Assembly: GCF_001194135.2 (NCBI RefSeq)
Contig: NC_068983.1
Coordinates: 130,961,178-131,002,544 of the forward strand
Direction of reading: 5' to 3'
DNA from: Octopus bimaculoides
Lineage: Eukaryota
Length of the DNA: 41,367 bases
Shown here: positions 29,125 to 41,367 of the stretch, piece by piece
Layout of the letters: each line of letters begins with the position of its first letter
How positions within the stretch are numbered: the stretch's first letter is position 1
Made by a program: the position numbers and the translations under genes
Notes under the pieces: generated by a model
The model's database searches: none
What the model was told of the DNA's origin: nothing
Seen by the model: the letters and a program-made list of their open reading frames with translations, nothing else

Positions 29125-30961
29125 CAGAAGCAACGAAAGGTAGATGAGCTGAAGAGGAATCTCACATTACAACAGACTTTTTTAACCAATCACAAAATGA
29201 AGCTGCTGTTAAGTCAAGATTTATTGTGGCAGAGATCACAAAATCAGCTCGGCCATTTACTGGCCATTTAATGTGTGACGTTTTGTGTCCAGACAAGAAG
29301 CAACTGTTTGCTAATGTGAGTATTAGCAGAAACACGGTTGCTGATCGGATGTGTGAGATGGCCACGGATTTGAAAACACAGTTGATTGTAAAAGGAAAAG
29401 ATTTTGTTGCATACTCTCGACTGATACGGCGTGGACTCTAATCTGTTCGCCAGGGAGGAAATTTTGGACATTAAATCGATGCAGGGGCAACAATAGGAAA
29501 GGACCTTTTTGAAAATATATGTCAAAGTGTAACCGACACGAAACTCCCTTGAGACAACAGATAGAGCACCGCAATGTACGGTGAAGAAAGTGTACAGGTG
29601 AGTAGGATACGTTTAAAGATGCAAGAAGAGAACTGCGCTGGTGAGTTGACAACATATCACTGCACCATACACTAGGAAACGCTGTGCGCTAAAGCCTTTA
29701 AAATGGAACATGTAATGAGCATTGTAATGTAAACCGTAAACTTTATCCTAGCCAAAGAGTTAAATCACCACTAACTCCAGTCTTTCCTTCGGGAAATGCA
29801 TTCAAAGATCGGTGACGTGCCTTATCAAACGGAGGTGCGGTGGCTCAGTCGGTGAAAGGTCCTCAACATAGTTTTTGAGCTGGTTGAGGAAATATGTCAG
29901 TTCATGGACAGTAAAAGAAAAGAATCCAAAGTTCTGCGGTATGAAAAGTGAAAATGCGAGTTGGCGTTTTTGGTTGACATAACTGCGCATCTCAATGTTT
30001 TAAACATCCAGCTCCAGAGATGGGATTGTATCATCTGTGATATGTACGACGCAGTGAAGGTATCTCAAGTAAAACTGCGCTTATGGGAAACACAAATGCA
30101 CCAATTGAACTTTTCTCACTTTCTCTGTTGCCAAGTAATGTTGAGCCAAGTCAGCGCCACGGTATTCTCAAAACAAAAAACTGGTTGTGCTCTGCACTGA
30201 ATTCACAAGGCGCTATAGTGACTTTGAAGCCCAGAAAAATAATTTCGAGCTGCTTCGCAGCCCATTTGCCGTCAATGTGGAAACTGCACCCGTACAGATC
30301 CAAATGGAGCTGATAGAACTTCAGTGTAATGGGGCATTAAAAGCAAAGTAAGACTTTGTGGGGCATGCACAGTTCACTCGCTGCATACCTGAAGCAATGC
30401 GCCCCAGCTCCGTTTACATGCACCTCGAACGCTGTCTTTGTTTGGAAGCAAATATCTGTGCGAGCAGCTTGTTCTCTGTGATGAAGATGAATAAAAAGTC
30501 ACATAGGAGTCGTCTCACAGATGAACGTCTGCAATCCATCCTGAGAGTCTCAACAACACACAACCTTGTCCCAAATATCAATGAACTCGTTACCAAGAAA
30601 AGATGCCAAGTATGTAGCTTGGACAAAATTGCATAAAGAAAATTGAAAGTCTTGATTTATTGTTTTAATTTTCACTAAAAAGTACATTTATTTATATTAT
30701 CTTTTGTTTTGTTTTTGCAACCTGCTCTTATTTCAAATTTCTATAAGTTTAACTAGAGATATTTTTATGCAGAGCAAAATATTTTAAGTAATTTAAGTTA
30801 AATTTAATTTATTTTTAGAATAAAATTATATACCATCTGTTTCAATACATGTTCATGTTTAAAGAGTTTTAGTCGGCTCAATGAATATTTAGCTTGTTCG
30901 GCCCGCGACCTAAAGTGTGCTTTGAGTTTTGGCCCCTGTGCGATTGAGTTTGACACCCGTG
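29125..30961 (+). mobile_element. hAT Charlie/SPIN-type transposon; most of the transposase is readable, left end lost
   Basis: NVSISRNTVADR, EVRWLSR, ELAFLVDITAHLNVLNIQLQ, QMELIELQC, CEQLFSVMKMNKKSHRSRLTDERL (hAT dimerisation domain). Right TIR gagtttgacacccgtg (30946-30961) is followed by ctctacat. Confidence 0.92.
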
Positions 30962-31530
30962 CTCTACATCAATGGTACCCTACAAAAGGCACTTTTTTAG
31001 TTAAACCAGTTTTCCCATTCGGACCCTACAATTCGAAATGTCTACGTTGCCAATGAGCTAAATTTAACTAAAACAATCTCATAGTTCCAGTTTTATCCTT
31101 CTATTGAAAGACATATGTAACATAGTAAATATATATAACTGAGTATTTATGCATTCTTCACAGCAGATTTAACATCTTGAATCTAAGGAATCCGCGTGCC
31201 TAAGGATGGAAGCCGTCGTCCTGCACATTCAAGTGAAGTGCGAGGATTAACAACCAAATTTCTCCCTCACCATATCCTAAGATGTAAAAAGGAGATGGAA
31301 CTGTTGGACAATTTGACGATGGAAATTCTGTCTGAATAAAAATGGTATTATTCTGGCTTGAAAACTTCCCTTATAAGTTATTGTCAATATGGGGTCACAG
31401 CAATAACAGGCACAATTAACTTCTACACGACCTTCTGATAAGGAATATTTGCTTACAGTTAGAATGTAAAGTCATTAAAGAGCACATTATTTACATTTGA
31501 CGGATATTTTTCCTCATCTTGTTTGTTGTT

Positions 31531-31576
31531 AACACAACGTTTCGGCTGATATACCCTTCAGCCTTCATCAGGTGTT
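31531..31576 (-). ncRNA. Minimal type I hammerhead ribozyme motif (Penelope-like class)
   Basis: Minus strand: AACAC-CUGAUGA-A-GGCUG(aagggtatat)CAGCC-GAAACGUU-GUGUU. Stem I is AACAC/GUGUU, stem II is GGCUG/CAGCC, the CUGANGA and GAAA core is intact, and palindromic AACGUU replaces stem III. Confidence 0.8.
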
Positions 31577-31642
31577 TGGGGAAATTTCGAACCTGGGTTC
31601 TCATTCCTAAGGTATTTTTCGTTTTTGTTGTTGTTGTTGTTG

Positions 31643-31686
<44 letters not shown>

Positions 31687-31690
<4 letters not shown>

Positions 31691-31768
31691 TCACTGCCTG
31701 GAATCGAACTCGGAATCTTAGGGTTAGTAGTCCCGTGCTCTTGACCACTACGTCATATGTCCGTGGGC
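31687..31768 (-). promoter_or_regulatory. tRNA-derived Pol III internal promoter (SINE head)
   Basis: A box TGACGTAGTGG (31755-31745), B box GAGTTCGATTCC (31711-31700), anticodon-like GGG..CTACTAA..CCC arm. No CCA end or intact acceptor stem. Confidence 0.75.
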
Positions 31769-32337
31769 AATTCTGGAATGAATTTTTAGGGCTTATAAAT
31801 CTAATATTTTCCTATCCTTCCATAATATGCTATTCATATCTGCACTCGGTCTGCTTAGGAGTTTATTGTGTCCTAGCACATGTGTTGCTTCTTTTAGTCT
31901 AACGACAAACAAGAAGAGGACAAATATCCATCAAATGTAAATAATGTAAATAATTTCTCATCTCTTAAATATAGAATTGTATCATTAAAGAGCAATTAGT
32001 ATCCCGTGTATTGATTACAAACTGATACTTGCTATTCCAAGTGATGATCAACAATATAGACGCTTATTATGTTCACCAGAAGATACTTTAGAGAAGCTGC
32101 AATGAAGTTTAGGAAACGTTGATACATCTCAGAATGTGTAAAGCCTAGCAATGAAGAAAATTGCTATTGAGTGCCATAAGCTTCTACGGCGATTCTCTAT
32201 CTCCACTTCTTTTCTGTCTAATCCTTGAACTGCTGAGGCAAGAGCTTCATTTACTGATTCACGACTTGAATCTGATGTTGACAAGACACAACAAGCTTCA
32301 TGACTTGTTGCTGTTACTATCTTTCTGAGCAGATAGT

Positions 32338-36270: not shown

Positions 36271-36821
36271 ATGCCTTGATGCAGTACCAGGCAGTGGCTC
36301 TCATGACTTCTGATCTGAACTGCCTGGAAATGCTATCATGTACATTGTTTTGTCTTGTTATAAAAGATGGGCTACAGCAAACATTCTGCTCAATACCACA
36401 GATTTGCTTGTCTATTGCTTGACCTTAATCAGTTGAGCATGTCCCTTGGTGGCTGATATGTGCATTTCTGACCATGCGCAGTAGTGGAGGAACATCATAG
36501 CCATGAGTTGAAAAGAATTCTTTAGAGTTTCAGTAACTAACCTCTGGAAATATGGGCGTTTTGTTCATCCTTAAACAAACCTCATTCAGGGACTTTTTGA
36601 GCGGGGGTGGTGGTTATTCAACCTGAAAAAGTTCTAACTGGGCCCCACCTGCAAGGTCATGCGCTGTTTATGTTGATATGAGATCAACATGTCCGGCACA
36701 TATGGTTGTGATGCATGTGCCTTATCAGGCGGATATTCATGATGGGCATATTTTGCTTCGTACATTTGTACCTCATTTGTACCTCATTGTCACTTTGATG
36801 GCATGTATTGCTCTCTCACTC
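36271..36821 (+). mobile_element. ~550-bp non-coding interspersed repeat ending in an (AAT)n tail
   Basis: Second copy at 12831-13301; the 5'-end fragment also abuts (ATT)n at 18125-18147. Confidence 0.85.
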
Positions 36822-36873
36822 AATAATAATAATTATTATTATAATAATAATAATTATTATTATTATTATTATA

Positions 36874-36909
<36 letters not shown>

Positions 36910-36926
36910 ATTATTATTATTATTAA

Positions 36927-36975
<49 letters not shown>

Positions 36976-36993
36976 ATTATTATTATTATTATT
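36822..36993. repeat. (AAT)n/(ATT)n microsatellite with strand switches
   Basis: Visible. Confidence 0.97.
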
Positions 36994-37280
36994 ATGCACT
37001 TTGTCCACCACCACTAGGTCCGGTCTGTTATGCTGTAGCGCCTGATCTGTTTGGATTGGGAAACCCCAGAGGATTTCGCTAGTCACCGATTCGGCACTCT
37101 CTGCGGTTTGTGCTCATAACATGTCTTGCCTCTCTCTCTAGACCCCACTTGTCATACAGTCTCCAATGTAGCATTTTTGCTACCTGATCGTGTCGCCAGA
37201 GCTTGTAGTGATTTTGAGCAAGTCTAGGGCATTCGTTCGTGATATGGGCAATGGTTTCATCCACTCAATTGCAGACGTGG
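36994..37280 (-). mobile_element. R4/Dong LINE fragment, inverted arm
   Basis: DETIAHITNECPRLAQNHYKLWRHDQVAKMLHW...PIQTDQALQHNRPDLVVVDKVH. Confidence 0.92.
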
Positions 37281-38023
37281 AAGACCGAGGGCAGTATACT
37301 GGCAGCGCAAAACCAAGCTTTGACCACGAAATGGAGGGTCAACCTTAACAGTGAGCAAGTGTCTCCGCTGTGCCACATCTGCAATAGAGTGGATGAAACC
37401 ATTTCCCATATCACGAACGAATGCCCTAGACTTGCCAAAAACCAAAACCAACTGTGATGAAGCGATCAGATAGTAAAAATGCTACATTGGTAACTGTGCG
37501 AAAAGTGGGGGGCAGAGAGAAGCAAGACGTGGTATGAGAACAAACTGCAGAGAGTCGGAGACTTGCAAAATCCTCTACGATTTCCCAATCCAAACAGATC
37601 AGGTGCTAGAGCATAACAGACCGGACCTAGTGGTGGTGGACAAGGTGCACGGCATATGTTGTGTAGTTAATGTCCGTTTGACCCAGGAATAGTCAAGAAG
37701 GAAGGCGAAAAGATAGATAAATAAAACCCTCTTAAGTACTAGATAACCCCTCTATGGAAAATGAAGAAGGTGATGATAGTGCCAATTATTTTGGGGTCCT
37801 TGGGAACAGTATCAGAAGGCATGAAGAAGAATATAAAGGAAATTGAAATAGAGTACCCAGTAGAACCGTTACAAAATGTTTGCTTCTTTGGCAGGTCAGA
37901 ATAATCAGGAAAGTATTAGTTAACTGAAAAGAACAGATAGCATGGTATTGTAGACTGTAGGTAGAAAGCCCGCTACGCATGCAAGACTCCAGGAGCTCAA
38001 CAAAACCTGTGATAAAGAGAATC
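37281..38023 (+). mobile_element. R4/Dong LINE 3' end with 3' UTR, followed by (AAT)n
   Basis: KTEGSILAAQNQAL, CHIC...HITNEC, HNRPDLVVVDKVH, VPIILGSLG, IIRKVL*. Confidence 0.92.
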
Positions 38024-38085
<62 letters not shown>

Positions 38086-38098
38086 TGATGATGATGAT
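38024..38098. repeat. (AAT)n(GAT)n microsatellite
   Basis: Visible. Confidence 0.97.
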
Positions 38099-38099
38099 G

Positions 38100-38790
38100 G
38101 CAAAAGAAAGAACTGATGATCAGGGATACGAAAACAAGAAATATATTGACAGTACACGGAGCTGTCCGGTGACACAGGTAGGCCGAACTTGTCCAGAAGA
38201 ACGGATTCTATTGAAACAGATGAAAACAGCTTAGGGTAGTATGTAAAAAATATCATGGAACCATTGCTGAAACATGTGAAGAAGTCTGGCATTATTAAAA
38301 CTGATAATTGTACTAAAAAAATTTAATGGGGAAAAGAACACAAAAAAAAGAAACAGCATGGAATGAGAAAATATGCTCGGTCATTTTGCAAGAGACAGGA
38401 ACGCCAAGACAGATACAGATGACTGGTGGATATGGATGAGCAGGAGTGACCTGAAGATAGAGATAGAAGGATATATTTGCGCAGCACAAGAACAAGCCTT
38501 AAGGACTAACTATGTGAAGTGCAGAATCCATAACACTACTGACAGTGACAAAGCCGAATGTGTGGTGAGAGAGGTGAAACGGTATGTTACATCGTTAGCG
38601 AGCGCCCGAATTTGGCATAACGCGAATACAAAAGACGACATGACAATGTGGCAAGAATGATCCATTGGGAGCCCTGTGGAAATCATGATCTACAAAGAGC
38701 AAAGACGTGGTATGAGGAAACCCTTAAAGGAGTCACTGAGAATGAAAATTCCGAAATCTTGTGAGCCTTTCCAACATACCCAGCTAAATA
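38100..38790 (+). mobile_element. R4/Dong LINE fragment (linker to zinc knuckle)
   Basis: WIWMSRSDLKIEIEGYICAAQEQALRTNYVKCRI (ORF 38373-38660), then HDNVARMIHWE and TWYEE. Confidence 0.9.
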
Positions 38791-39199
38791 AGCTGAGAAT
38801 TTTCATCAAACAACAACAACAGTAAAAATAATAATAATAGGACATGCCTGAAATCACATAATAATACAACGGTATGACAATCCATCAACTTTTGTGTATG
38901 ACTGATTTCAAGTCATAAGCTGCAAGCGATAAACAACTAGAAACACCACAGCAGACAGTACATAGCTTTGCCAGACGATTTTATATTGTAATATTCAGAT
39001 AATTAAAAATGTCCAAAAGCAACCTTGAAAAGAAGAAACTAATGAGTTGAATGATAAGATGCCATGCATATAAACATAAAGAGAGAGGGAGAGAAGGGGA
39101 GAGAAGGGGAGAGAGAGGGAGAGTGAAAGAAATAGAGAGAGATCTTTCTTAGTTCAAGGAAGCCAATAAATACAAAACAGAGAGTGAAATGATGAATAG

Positions 39200-40500: not shown

Positions 40501-40544
40501 CTCTTTAGAGCTGTTCAAGAACGCAATAAAAACGATATTACTGA

Positions 40545-40595
40545 ATAATAATAATAATAACAACAACAACAAAGACGACGACGACGACGACGATG

Positions 40596-40632: not shown

Positions 40633-41154
40633 TGTTGATATTTTCTTAATTATTTGTTTTTCTTATTAACTGTCAAGGGAAAGAAAAACAATCCATTCTC
40701 ATTTTATTATATTCCTTCCCTTACCGCCCCCACCTTTTCGTTCTTCTTTTCTAACCATTTCATTTTGTTTTTTTTTGTTTTTGTTTTTTTGTTTTCTCCG
40801 CAGTCATCACCATATTTGCTATTTCAACTTAATTTTATTTAATGTAACGCCTCTACTTCCTTGAGATTTATTAGCGATTCACTCTTTACCCTTCTCCACT
40901 CTAAACAATCCACTGAATATTCTGCGAACACTCAACACTTTAGTTTATCATTATTTACGAGTATTGTTAAGACATTTAGAGGGAGGATTCCCTTGTGAAG
41001 AAGTGCGAGAGTTAGCAGGAATGTTGTACAATGATATTACGAGTGTGTGCATGCTAGTGCCTGAATATGTAAATTTGTGTATGTAAGTGTAATGCGTGTA
41101 CGTCTACGCTTGTGAACCAGCTAATTTATTTACCTATCAAGAAATATTTTATAT

Positions 41155-41193
41155 CTTTACACACACATATACGCACAGGTACACAGACGCACT

Positions 41194-41230
<37 letters not shown>

Positions 41231-41328
41231 ACACCAATACATATATTAATATGATGCTTATATATGTATATATACTTATACATATATATCTATACATGCA
41301 TACATATATTGATTTTTATTTATTATAT

Positions 41329-41367
<39 letters not shown>
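41155..41367. repeat. (CA)n/(TA)n microsatellite region
   Basis: Visible. Confidence 0.95.

What the first reader, a model, noticed from the sequence alone, without database searches (positions are those of the whole stretch)
31485..31981. tRNA-headed, hammerhead-ribozyme-bearing SINE-like retroelement
Seen (minus strand): a tRNA-like head with A and B boxes (31768-31687), an (AAT)n(AAC)n spacer, a second B-box-like GGTTCGAAAT (31593-31584), an intact hammerhead core (31576-31531) and a short tail, all inside a 13-bp TSD. There is no TTTT terminator between head and ribozyme, so one Pol III transcript could span both. Known: minimal hammerheads occur in Penelope-like pLTRs and retrozymes; schistosome Sm-alpha is a tRNA-related SINE with a hammerhead. 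Inference: a Pol III-driven, self-cleaving non-autonomous element that uses PLE RT/GIY-YIG. I know of no description of this in cephalopods.
Basis: partly seen in the sequence, partly recalled or inferred. Interest (0 to 1): 0.88.

Follow-up and report, generated by a model that had tools for sequence, protein, structure and literature searches.

The report
Octopus SINE with Penelope hammerhead tail
A 497-bp insertion in an octopus-type genome is a small non-coding retroelement that joins a tRNA-like promoter head to the hammerhead-bearing end of a Penelope-like retrotransposon, and the way it is inserted matches Penelope machinery; all its parts are known kinds, but I found no description of this family in cephalopods.

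Summary
On the minus strand, inside an exact 13-bp target-site duplication, lie Pol III A and B boxes 34 nt apart, an (AAT)13(AAC)7 tract, a conserved GGTTCGAAATTTCC block, and a complete minimal hammerhead at 31576-31531. That hammerhead was the only descriptor hit in the window, with none in 300 shuffles.

The 5' end of the insert is an inverted, 5'-truncated 82-nt copy of the element's own 3' tail, and it carries a 34-nt extension that the direct copy lacks. The literature describes this arrangement as the insertion signature of Penelope-like elements (PLEs).

Head, microsatellite, body and CUGAUGAAGG co-occur in a second Octopus bimaculoides copy, seen through an exonised antisense copy. 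A cuttlefish locus carries a related family with the same architecture.

ARAGORN finds no tRNA, and Rfam finds no significant tRNA and no hammerhead. Self-cleavage and Pol III transcription are untested. A 137-nt stretch between the inverted copy and the head is unexplained.

Verdict: a PLE-dependent, tRNA-type SINE with a PLE minimal hammerhead. It is a new member of a known kind; the schistosome Sm-alpha family is the precedent.

The parts
31472..31484 (.). Target-site duplication, 3'-side copy relative to the element's sense (minus) strand: TCATTAAAGAGCA on the + strand.
   Evidence: Exact 13-nt direct repeat (family D4).
31982..31994 (.). Target-site duplication, 5'-side copy.
   Evidence: (D4).
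31900..31981 (+). Inverted, 5'-truncated copy of the element's 3' tail (82 nt). Positions 31900-31947 are the 48-nt arm. Positions 31948-31981 are the 34-nt 'tail' extension, which the direct copy lacks.
   Evidence: The inverted repeat is 92% complementary (I1). The extension is homologous to the long 3' ends of cuttlefish copies...CTCATCTC..ATATAGAC. The architecture is as described for PLE insertions (PMC8557442; PMC11167929).
31763..31899 (-). 137-nt stretch of unknown origin between the inverted copy and the head.
   Evidence: No significant similarity in either orientation to the element, the cuttlefish copy, the window or L002.
31687..31762 (-). tRNA-like head. A box at 31755-31745, B box at 31710-31700, with a 34-nt gap between them.
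   Evidence: Only A+B pair in the window; 0 of 100 shuffles produced one. No tRNA from ARAGORN or Rfam. The head of the cuttlefish relative starts with the same GGACAYATG, has a perfect A box, and gives a sub-threshold full-length tRNA model match (13.3 bits, E=2.3).
31627..31686 (-). Internal microsatellite, (AAT)13(AAC)7.
   Evidence: The second octopus copy has about (AAT)9 at the same place, seen as a run of Ile in the antisense ORF.
31577..31626 (-). Body segment containing the conserved block GGTTCGAAATTTCC (31593-31580).
   Evidence: Conserved in the second octopus copy (LGKFRTWVLIPKVFF, 15/15 aa) and in cuttlefish copies (GGTTCGAAATTCC).
31531..31576 (-). Minimal type-I hammerhead:
- helix I 5' strand, 31576-31572
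- CUGAUGA, 31571-31565
- bulged A, 31564
- helix II, 31563-31558 paired with 31549-31544
- GAAA, 31543-31540
- C15.2 G16.2 U16.1 U17, 31539-31536
- predicted cleavage between 31536 and 31535
- helix I 3' strand, 31535-31531
   Evidence: Single descriptor hit in the window; 0 of 300 shuffles. The minimum-free-energy fold contains helices I and II, z = -2.4. All four non-descriptor features of PLE minimal hammerheads are present (PMC4209133). The core is identical in cuttlefish copies with intact cores.
31485..31531 (-). 3' tail of the direct copy, ending at the short 3' end (...AAATGTAAATAATG).
   Evidence: Right arm of the inverted repeat. About 80% identical to cuttlefish tails. Covariance model R1 scores 112.8 bits over 31485-31600.

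Best explanation
The insert (31485-31981, sense on the minus strand) is one copy of a non-autonomous retroelement family of coleoid cephalopods. It has three modules:
1. a tRNA-derived head with Pol III A and B boxes;
2. a variable body, which in Octopus is an (AAT)n(AAC)n tract plus a conserved GGTTCGAAATTTCC segment;
3. a 3' module of about 95-130 nt, made of a Penelope-type minimal hammerhead followed by a conserved tail.

Shown:
- The modules co-occur in independent copies in Octopus and in cuttlefish.
- The hammerhead meets every sequence and structure criterion of PLE minimal hammerheads.
- The insertion has the PLE signature.

Inferred mechanism: a PLE reverse transcriptase/GIY-YIG endonuclease made a staggered cut, which gives the 13-bp duplication. 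It then primed reverse transcription on both DNA strands. One cDNA started at the internal start site (...AATAATG) and copied the RNA through the head. The other started about 34 nt further 3' (...ATATAGAATTGTA) and stopped after 82 nt. Joining the two cDNAs gave an inverted truncated copy with the 'tail' next to the long copy.

Inferred, not shown:
- Source copies are transcribed by Pol III from the head, reading through the hammerhead and tail because there is no T4 run.
- The hammerhead is retained because it is part of the 3' module that the PLE enzyme recognises. Lacking helix III, it could cleave only when two RNAs pair through the palindrome ACGU. The uncleaved monomer would therefore be the template for retrotransposition.
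For: Family status:
- The antisense ORF 31519-31902 matches O. bimaculoides A0A0L8FR24. The match runs across CUGAUGAAGG, the GGTTCGAAATTTCC block (15/15 aa), the Ile run that corresponds to (AAT)n, and the head (14/15 aa).
- blastn and model R1 find at least 7 related hammerhead+tail copies in 45 kb of Acanthosepion pharaonis DNA.
- One of these (L002 38735-38441) is full length, with a head that starts GGACACATG and has a perfect A box.

Hammerhead:
- Single descriptor hit, 0 of 300 shuffles.
- The bulged nucleotide after A9, the G10.1-C11.1 pair, the complementary 15.2/16.2 pair, a 6-bp helix II and a 5-bp helix I all match PMC4209133.
- Between octopus and cuttlefish, the core and the base of helix II are identical. 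Differences fall in N7, loop II and the distal ends of the helices.
- Pair 10.4-11.4 occurs as C-G, U-A and U-G.

PLE signature:
- A 48-nt inverted arm plus a one-sided 34-nt extension, inside the 13-bp duplication.
- The same arrangement occurs twice in cuttlefish: 38483-38577 against 38745-38839, with a flanking direct repeat at 38434-51 and 38927-44, and 41150-41251 against 41253-41354.
- In all three pairs, one member has the short 3' end and the other has the long one.
- PMC8557442 describes exactly this: an inverted 5'-truncated copy plus a 30-40 bp tail at one end.
- PMC11167929 shows a PLE enzyme extending both strands from two RT start sites that delimit the tail.

Pol III features: a unique A/B box pair and no T4 run.
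Against: - ARAGORN finds no tRNA, and Rfam finds no significant tRNA in the head and no hammerhead; the only tRNA-model match is a sub-threshold one in the cuttlefish relative.
- Octopus and cuttlefish heads align only weakly (162 of 2000 shuffles score as well).
- Covariation in the hammerhead helices is not significant with six sequences (57 of 500 shuffles).
- Half of the cuttlefish copies have mutated cores, and no cuttlefish copy passes the full descriptor.
- No autonomous PLE sharing this 3' module was found. The only PLE-like remnant in the window (5257-5616) shares nothing with the element.
- The 137 nt upstream of the head, inside the duplication, do not fit a template RNA that begins at a Pol III start site.
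- Only two octopus copies could be examined, one of them only as protein.
- Nearest-neighbour energies do not favour the dimeric hammerhead over two monomers (-26.3 against -29.2 kcal/mol).
Confidence: 0.72

Rival explanations
1. The family and its PLE-type mobilisation are real, but the hammerhead-shaped segment does not self-cleave in vivo. On this reading it persists only as part of the RNA structure that the PLE enzyme binds, or as a passenger copied from the PLE terminus.
For: - Minimal PLE hammerheads show no monomer cleavage and only weak cleavage as dimers (PMC4209133).
- Hammerhead catalytic mutants did not change PLE insertion in vitro, and no RNA-seq ends mapped to the cut site (PMC11167929).
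- Whole PLE clades thrive without canonical hammerheads (PMC8557442).
- Cleavage here would cut off the tail that holds the RT start sites (geometry).
- There is a single hammerhead per locus and no tandem partner.
Against: - The catalytic nucleotides, the bulged base and the G10.1-C11.1 pair are the part best conserved between octopus and cuttlefish, while the loop and the distal helices vary. Constraint on the ribozyme fold would produce this pattern.
- The palindromic ACGU is kept wherever its CpG has not decayed.
Confidence: 0.35
2. The template RNA of this copy, and perhaps of the family, is not a Pol III transcript from the head. It is instead a longer read-through or Pol II transcript, and the A/B boxes are only a relic of the tRNA-derived ancestor.
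For: - 137 nt of unrelated sequence lie upstream of head position 1 but inside the target-site duplication.
- The head no longer scores as tRNA.
- Each box carries a mismatch.
Against: - In the cuttlefish composite, the head's position 1 abuts the inverted copy directly. This is what a transcript starting at the tRNA 5' end would give.
- The box spacing is exactly tRNA-like and the pair is unique in the window.
- There is no T4 run along 277 nt of AT-rich sequence.
- The 137 nt could be filler or a template switch at the cDNA junction.
Confidence: 0.3
3. Chance or nested juxtaposition: an ordinary LINE-dependent tRNA SINE with an (AAT)n tail happens to sit next to an unrelated PLE fragment.
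For: - (AAT)n arrays are common in the window, and the head could end at its own microsatellite tail.
- No other copy is present in the window.
Against: - The same order (head, (AAT)n, body block, CUGAUGAAGG) occurs in a second octopus locus.
- A cuttlefish copy joins a similar head to the same body block, hammerhead and tail with no microsatellite.
- One 13-bp duplication flanks the whole unit.
Confidence: 0.04
4. A MITE or foldback DNA transposon with 48-bp terminal inverted repeats.
For: A 48-nt inverted repeat, 92% complementary, and a strongly folding whole-insert RNA/DNA (z = -7.2).
Against: - The repeat is not terminal on one side; it is offset by 34 nt from the duplication.
- The arm equals the 3' tail of a family whose inverted partners are truncated at different points in different loci (82 nt, about 190 nt, about 100 nt).
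- The 13-bp duplication and the hammerhead fit a PLE, not a cut-and-paste element.
Confidence: 0.03

Closest known systems
Sm-alpha / Sj-alpha SINE-like retroposons of schistosomes (Ferbeyre et al. 1998; Laha et al. 2000; cited in PMC8490949)
   Same: Short and non-coding. A Pol III-type (tRNA-related) promoter region is joined to a type-I hammerhead. High copy number, in a genome that also holds hammerhead-bearing PLEs.
   Different: - Sm-alpha carries a canonical hammerhead with a short helix III and loop-loop contacts, and it is active in vitro. Here the motif is the minimal form without helix III.
- Sm-alpha occurs largely in tandem or satellite arrays. This element is dispersed, with an inverted truncated partner.
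- The phylum differs and there is no sequence similarity, so the origin is independent.
Minimal hammerheads in the pseudo-LTRs of metazoan Penelope-like elements (Cervera & de la Pena 2014, PMC4209133)
   Same: - Core CUGANGA/GAAA.
- An unpaired base between A9 and 10.1.
- G10.1-C11.1 pair.
- A long helix II and a 4-5 bp helix I.
- No helix III, with complementary 15.2/16.2.
- Pairs of motifs on opposite strands 100-700 bp apart are reported there.
   Different: Here the motif sits in a roughly 280-nt element with a tRNA-like head and no RT/EN ORF. Activity is untested.
PLE insertion architecture (Craig et al. 2021, PMC8557442; Frangieh et al. 2024, PMC11167929)
   Same: An inverted 5'-truncated copy at the 5' end, a 30-40 bp 'tail' at one end only, two alternative 3' ends, and a target-site duplication.
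   Different: Those papers describe it for autonomous PLEs. Here it frames a SINE-sized element. The partner PLE is not identified.
Metazoan non-LTR retrozymes (Cervera & de la Pena 2020, PMC7229834; Li et al. 2026 preprint, 10.64898/2026.07.22.740005)
   Same: Non-autonomous, hammerhead-bearing, low GC, thought to depend on PLEs. Reported in a mollusc (mussel).
   Different: Retrozymes are tandem repeats of 170-400 bp, each with a hammerhead, processed to circular RNA. This locus has a single hammerhead, is not tandem, and has a Pol III-type head.
Classical tRNA-derived SINEs, including cephalopod Ceph-SINEs (PMC5786205)
   Same: A head with A/B boxes, a body, a 3' module borrowed from an autonomous partner, and target-site duplications.
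   Different: Ceph-SINEs carry a Ceph/CORE domain and RTE-derived sequence. This element has none of these (compared with the sequence). Its 3' module is PLE-like, with no poly(A) or simple-repeat end.

Membership tests
Hammerhead ribozyme, PLE minimal type (min-HHR) | Catalytic core C3 U4 G5 A6 N7 G8 A9 ... G12 A13 A14, followed by A15.1, U16.1 and H17. | tested here: met
   CUGAUGA 31571-31565, GAAA 31543-31540, U16.1 and U17 at 31537-31536.
Hammerhead ribozyme, PLE minimal type (min-HHR) | Helix II closed by G10.1-C11.1, with one unpaired nucleotide between A9 and 10.1. | tested here: met
   A at 31564. GGCUGA/UCAGCC, 6 bp. Criteria from PMC4209133.
Hammerhead ribozyme, PLE minimal type (min-HHR) | No helix III; positions 15.2 and 16.2 complementary, so that A-C-G-U is palindromic for dimer formation. 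| tested here: met
   ACGU at 31540-31537.
Hammerhead ribozyme, PLE minimal type (min-HHR) | Short helix I (4-5 bp) flanking the core and the cleavage site. | tested here: met
   AACAC/GUGUU, 5 bp.
Hammerhead ribozyme, PLE minimal type (min-HHR) | Conservation and compensatory change among copies. | tested here: inconclusive
   - The core is identical between octopus and those cuttlefish copies with intact cores.
- 3 of 6 aligned copies have intact cores.
- One pair shows C-G/U-A/U-G.
- The covariation score was reached by 57 of 500 shuffles.
Hammerhead ribozyme, PLE minimal type (min-HHR) | Self-cleavage at H17. | not testable with these tools
   Needs in vitro transcription of monomer and dimer.
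Hammerhead ribozyme, canonical types in Rfam (Hammerhead_1, _3, II, HH9, HH10) | Match to the family covariance model. | tested here: not met
   No hammerhead match at the gathering score or at E<=10. This is expected for a motif lacking helix III.
tRNA-derived SINE (SINE2) | Internal Pol III promoter: A and B boxes at tRNA-like spacing. | tested here: met
   TGACGTAGTGG and AGTTCGATTCC, gap 34. Unique in the window; 0 of 100 shuffles.
tRNA-derived SINE (SINE2) | Recognisable similarity of the head to a tRNA. | tested here: not met
   ARAGORN finds none. Rfam tRNA finds none at E<=10. The cuttlefish relative is only sub-threshold (13.3 bits, E=2.3).
tRNA-derived SINE (SINE2) | Short, non-coding, a repeated family with the same modular order, flanked by target-site duplications. 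| tested here: met
   Second octopus copy. Cuttlefish copies. Duplications. The copy number in Octopus could not be measured.
tRNA-derived SINE (SINE2) | 3' end shared with an autonomous partner element. | not testable with these tools
   No cephalopod PLE with termini was reachable. The PLE remnant at 5257-5616 shares nothing with the element.
PLE-mediated insertion | An inverted 5'-truncated copy adjoining the 5' end of the unit. | tested here: met
   31900-31981 (+) against 31485-31531 (-). The same is seen twice in cuttlefish.
PLE-mediated insertion | A 30-40 bp 'tail' extension present at one end only (two alternative 3' ends). | tested here: met
   34 nt at 31948-31981, on the inverted copy only. 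Short and long ends are paired in 3 of 3 inverted pairs.
PLE (autonomous) | An ORF with a telomerase-like RT and a GIY-YIG endonuclease. | tested here: not met
   No ORF with a Pfam match in the insert. It is therefore at most non-autonomous.
Metazoan non-LTR retrozyme | Tandem repeats of 170-400 bp, each unit with a type-I hammerhead. | tested here: not met
   One hammerhead only, and no second unit in the window.
MITE / TIR DNA transposon | Inverted repeats at both termini, directly flanked by the duplication. | tested here: not met
   The left arm is 34 nt inside the duplication. Partner lengths vary between loci.

The most novel reading that the evidence does not exclude
This would be a bona fide SINE-PLE partnership: a Pol III, tRNA-type SINE lineage shared by octopus and cuttlefish, and so possibly as old as the coleoid split. 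Its conserved 3' module of about 95-130 nt (minimal hammerhead, plus a hairpin bracketing two RT start sites) would define the minimal cis-requirements for trans-mobilisation by a Penelope-like enzyme. The hammerhead would act only in RNA dimers, as a dosage-dependent brake or processing step. I found no description of such a SINE class in the library searched.
Probability: 0.35. Interest if true: 0.7.

Novelty: new member of a known kind. Interest (0 to 1): 0.5.

Why it matters
SINEs are normally defined by their dependence on LINEs. A SINE-sized element with a Pol III head, a PLE minimal hammerhead and the PLE insertion signature would show that PLEs also support classical SINE-type parasites. 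The schistosome Sm-alpha elements suggested this long ago, and retrozyme work now argues for it.

The 3' module is only about 95-130 nt long and is conserved between octopus and cuttlefish. That makes it a compact natural substrate for two open questions:
- What does a PLE reverse transcriptase recognise in its template?
- What, if anything, does the PLE hammerhead do?

It also bears on repeat annotation in octopus genomes, where SINEs are the largest repeat class. One antisense copy has already been built into a predicted NUP42 protein.

Tried and rejected
- ARAGORN and Rfam (gathering and E<=10) on the window and on the head alone gave no tRNA and no hammerhead.
- blastn of the insert against the window found only microsatellite matches and the inverted arm, so there is no second copy in 41 kb.
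- I looked for other copies through spurious ORFs:
  - The antisense ORF gave one useful hit, P0001.
  - The NUP42 N-terminus found only the cuttlefish orthologue.
- The look-up of encoding contigs found no record for P0001 or for three window ORFs. No further octopus DNA could be fetched.
- DNA pattern scans:
  - metagenome contigs gave one chance bacterial hit, L001;
  - viral and prokaryotic genome contigs gave none.
- I tested whether the 137-nt spacer is a degenerate second head, a partial tandem copy, or a continuation of the inverted copy. It is not better than shuffles in either orientation.
- I tested whether other (AAT)n arrays in the window are tails of the same SINE. They are not.
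- A candidate extra copy at window 29676-29733 was rejected on reading the sequence.
- My first reading of P0001, as showing a 7-nt duplication in helix II and a conserved GAAACGTT, was withdrawn. Alignment to cuttlefish NUP42 showed that ...ERFQDY is genuine NUP42 coding sequence.
- Ceph-SINE membership was rejected: no Ceph/CORE or RTE-like domain.
- Dimer cofolding does not favour the dimeric hammerhead energetically, so it is not used as support.
Full report
**What is in the sequence.** Read on the minus strand, the region is a 497-bp insert (31485-31981). It is flanked by an exact 13-bp direct repeat, TCATTAAAGAGCA, at 31472-31484 and 31982-31994. From 5' to 3' on the minus strand it contains:
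- a 34-nt segment (31981-31948);
- a 48-nt segment (31947-31900) that is the reverse complement of the element's own 3' end, 92% complementary;
- 137 nt with no detectable relative (31899-31763);
- a head (31762-31687) with A box TGACGTAGTGG and B box AGTTCGATTCC, 34 nt apart;
- (AAT)13(AAC)7 (31686-31627);
- a body segment with GGTTCGAAATTTCC (31593-31580);
- a hammerhead-shaped motif (31576-31531);
- a tail ending at 31485.

There is no run of four T on this strand from 31994 to 31400.

**Is it more than chance?**
- Boxes: a scan for A and B boxes (at most 1 mismatch each, gap 25-60) finds only this pair on either strand of the window. None appeared in 100 dinucleotide shuffles.
- Hammerhead: I used a descriptor requiring helix I of at least 3 bp, CUGANGA, 0-1 bulged base, helix II of at least 4 bp closed by G-C, GAAA, complementary 15.2/16.2, U16.1 and H17. 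It finds only 31576-31531 in the window, and nothing in 300 shuffles.
- Only three bare CUGANGA...GAAA cores occur in the window.
- The 52-nt segment folds into helices I and II as its minimum-energy structure (z = -2.4).
- Against this, ARAGORN and Rfam see neither a tRNA nor a hammerhead. The head is tRNA-like only in its promoter boxes and their spacing. The ribozyme is outside the canonical Rfam models, as expected for a motif without helix III.

**The hammerhead is the Penelope type.** Cervera and de la Pena (PMC4209133) defined a minimal hammerhead in the pseudo-LTRs of metazoan Penelope-like elements (PLEs).
- It has no helix III, a long helix II and a 4-5 bp helix I.
- Several traits were not part of their search descriptor but recurred in their hits, including an unpaired nucleotide between A9 and 10.1, a conserved G10.1-C11.1 pair, and palindromic 15.2-16.2.
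- The octopus motif has all of these: bulged A at 31564, the G-C closing pair, ACGU, a 6-bp helix II and a 5-bp helix I.
- That paper also reports that such motifs cleave weakly and only as dimers. 'Intact' here means intact by sequence criteria, not shown to be active.

**Is it a family, and do head and ribozyme co-occur?** The window holds no second copy. The public DNA collections available here hold no octopus DNA. I therefore translated the antisense ORF 31519-31902 and searched protein databases.
- The only real hit is an Octopus bimaculoides gene model, A0A0L8FR24 'NUP42'.
- Its last 48 residues are an antisense copy of this element. They comprise PSSGV (= CACCTGATGAAGG), LGKFRTWVLIPKVFF (15/15; the GGTTCGAAATTTCC region), a run of Ile (= (AAT)n), and QVTAWNRTRNLGVSS (14/15; the head).
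- Alignment with cuttlefish NUP42 shows that genuine coding sequence ends at ...FQDY. The SINE-derived exon therefore begins at the CCCTTCAG| acceptor on the antisense strand of the hammerhead.

**A related family in cuttlefish.** The cuttlefish NUP42 locus (L002; 45 kb of Acanthosepion pharaonis) unexpectedly carries several copies of the hammerhead+tail module.
- A covariance model built from six copies scores them at 95-115 bits. It also finds two degenerate copies.
- One copy (L002 38735-38441, minus strand) is full length. Its head starts GGACACATGGCCCAGTGG, with a perfect A box. About 110 nt of body follow, then GGTTCGAAATTCC, the hammerhead and the tail.
- Rfam's tRNA model aligns end to end with that head, starting exactly at its first base, but only at 13.3 bits (E = 2.3).
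- The octopus and cuttlefish heads share GGACAYATG..C..AGTGG and a few later blocks. The alignment is not significant on its own.
- Between the two species, the hammerhead core, the bulged A and the first three pairs of helix II are identical. Differences fall in N7, loop II and the distal ends of the helices.
- Pair 10.4-11.4 occurs as C-G, U-A and U-G. With six sequences the covariation statistics are not significant.
- Three of the six copies have mutated cores. Several differences are CpG decay, for example ACGU to ACAU.

**The insertion signature.**
- Craig et al. [quoted passage not shown]
- Frangieh et al. (PMC11167929) showed that a purified PLE protein cleaves and extends both DNA strands. 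It starts reverse transcription at two nearby internal sites, and the distance between them corresponds to that tail.
- The octopus insert fits exactly. The direct copy ends at ...AAATGTAAATAATG. The inverted 82-nt copy runs 34 nt further, to ...ATATAGAATTGTA. Both 3' ends abut the 13-bp duplication.
- The 34-nt extension is not random filler. It is homologous to the long 3' ends of cuttlefish copies.
- The cuttlefish locus repeats the pattern twice. The full-length copy has the short end and its inverted truncated partner has the long end, flanked by the direct repeat AARCATTTTTATTA. A second, nearly palindromic pair of truncated copies behaves the same way.
- The inverted partners are truncated at different points (82, about 190 and about 100 nt). 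This fits abortive cDNAs and does not fit a transposon with fixed terminal inverted repeats.
- A conserved potential hairpin (AGATGAGGA...TCCTCATCT) brackets the short end. It shows no compensatory changes, so I list it only as noticed.

**Most likely mechanism.**
- Shown: the modular family, the PLE-type hammerhead, and the PLE-type insertion scars.
- Inferred: a PLE RT/GIY-YIG enzyme supplied in trans cut the target with a 13-bp stagger and primed on both strands. One cDNA copied the element RNA from the internal start site. The other began at the distal site and aborted after 82 nt. The two were then joined.
- Inferred: source copies are transcribed by Pol III from the head, through the T4-free body, hammerhead and tail.
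- Inferred: the hammerhead is kept because it belongs to the 3' module the enzyme uses. Lacking helix III, it would cleave only in RNA dimers. Because cleavage would detach the tail that carries the start sites, the uncleaved monomer must be the retrotransposition template.

**Open problems.**
- The 137 nt between the inverted copy and head position 1 lie inside the duplication but match nothing. In cuttlefish the head abuts the inverted copy directly. This stretch may be carried-along upstream flank, which would argue against a Pol III start for this copy's template. It may instead be filler at the cDNA junction, or an octopus-specific 5' part of the family.
- No autonomous PLE with this terminus could be examined. 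The GIY-YIG-like remnant at 5257-5616 (Pfam E = 0.022, below the cut-off) shares nothing with the element.
- Copy number in Octopus is unknown.

**Comparison with what is known.**
- The closest precedent is the schistosome Sm-alpha/Sj-alpha family: SINE-like, with Pol III boxes and a hammerhead. It has a canonical, active hammerhead and largely tandem organisation.
- Metazoan retrozymes are tandem, circular-RNA-forming, PLE-related non-autonomous elements. This locus fails their defining tandem feature.
- Ceph-SINEs, the described cephalopod SINE superfamily, are built on CORE/RTE-derived sequence and are unrelated.
- Cephalopod repeat surveys in the library list tRNA-Core and tRNA-Deu SINEs and Penelope elements separately. 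The giant squid paper only counts 235 Rfam Hammerhead_1 hits.
- I found no description of a tRNA-headed, PLE-tailed element in cephalopods. Repbase and Dfam could not be consulted.

**Verdict.** The feature is real. All components are known and there is a precedent for the combination, so I rate it a new member of a known kind, of moderate interest (0.5).

Noticed in passing
window 5257-5616 (+): An ORF remnant with Cys-rich linker and GIY-YIG-like motifs (VVYSIRC...YIMETSRS...RLNEH), typical of a PLE endonuclease C-terminus. The Pfam GIY-YIG match is E=0.022, below the cut-off. No RT lies upstream and no hammerhead or tail lies downstream.
   Followed up: partly
O. bimaculoides protein A0A0L8FR24 (P0001), residues 146-194; corresponds to window 31570-31720 antisense: A predicted NUP42 protein ends in 48 residues translated from an antisense copy of this SINE. 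The exon appears to start at a CCCTTCAG| acceptor on the antisense strand of the hammerhead. It is either an exonised SINE or a gene-model artefact.
   Followed up: partly
L002 15459-15576, 23622-23739, 37138-37255 (+): Three 5S-rRNA-derived heads (Rfam 5S, 59-64 bits) in the cuttlefish locus. The one read (15459) is followed by Ceph-domain-like sequence (CCCTTGGGAAAGG...CCAGCTATGGATTAA), which marks it as a 5S-headed Ceph-type SINE unrelated to the element studied.
   Followed up: partly
window 31900-31981 (+); L002 38836-38932, 16138-16230 (+), 41092-41186 (-): A conserved potential hairpin, AGATGAGGA...(about 43 nt)...TCCTCATCT, in the full-length tail. It brackets the short 3' end, which is the putative internal RT start. 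It is conserved in sequence, but no compensatory changes are seen.
   Followed up: partly
window 31899-31763 (-): A 137-nt stretch inside the target-site duplication with no detectable relative. See the notebook entry under 'unexplained'.
   Followed up: yes
window 29832-29870 (+) and 21360-21445 (+): Other tRNA-like fragments: GCGGTGGCTCAGTCGGT, which is A-box-like, and GGGTTCAAGTCC, which is B-box-like. They may be heads of other SINE families.
   Followed up: no
window 18150-18380, 36820-37000, 38020-38100, 40525-40590: Long (AAT)n/(ATT)n arrays not attached to this SINE. Assembly gaps (runs of N) lie near 2750-2900 and 17700-18000.
   Followed up: partly
L002 41150-41354: A near-perfect palindrome of two 5'-truncated hammerhead+tail copies, with arms 102 nt long, 77% complementary and 1 nt apart. 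They belong to a subfamily that lacks the GGTTCGAAATTCC block and may derive from the autonomous PLE or from another non-autonomous lineage.
   Followed up: partly
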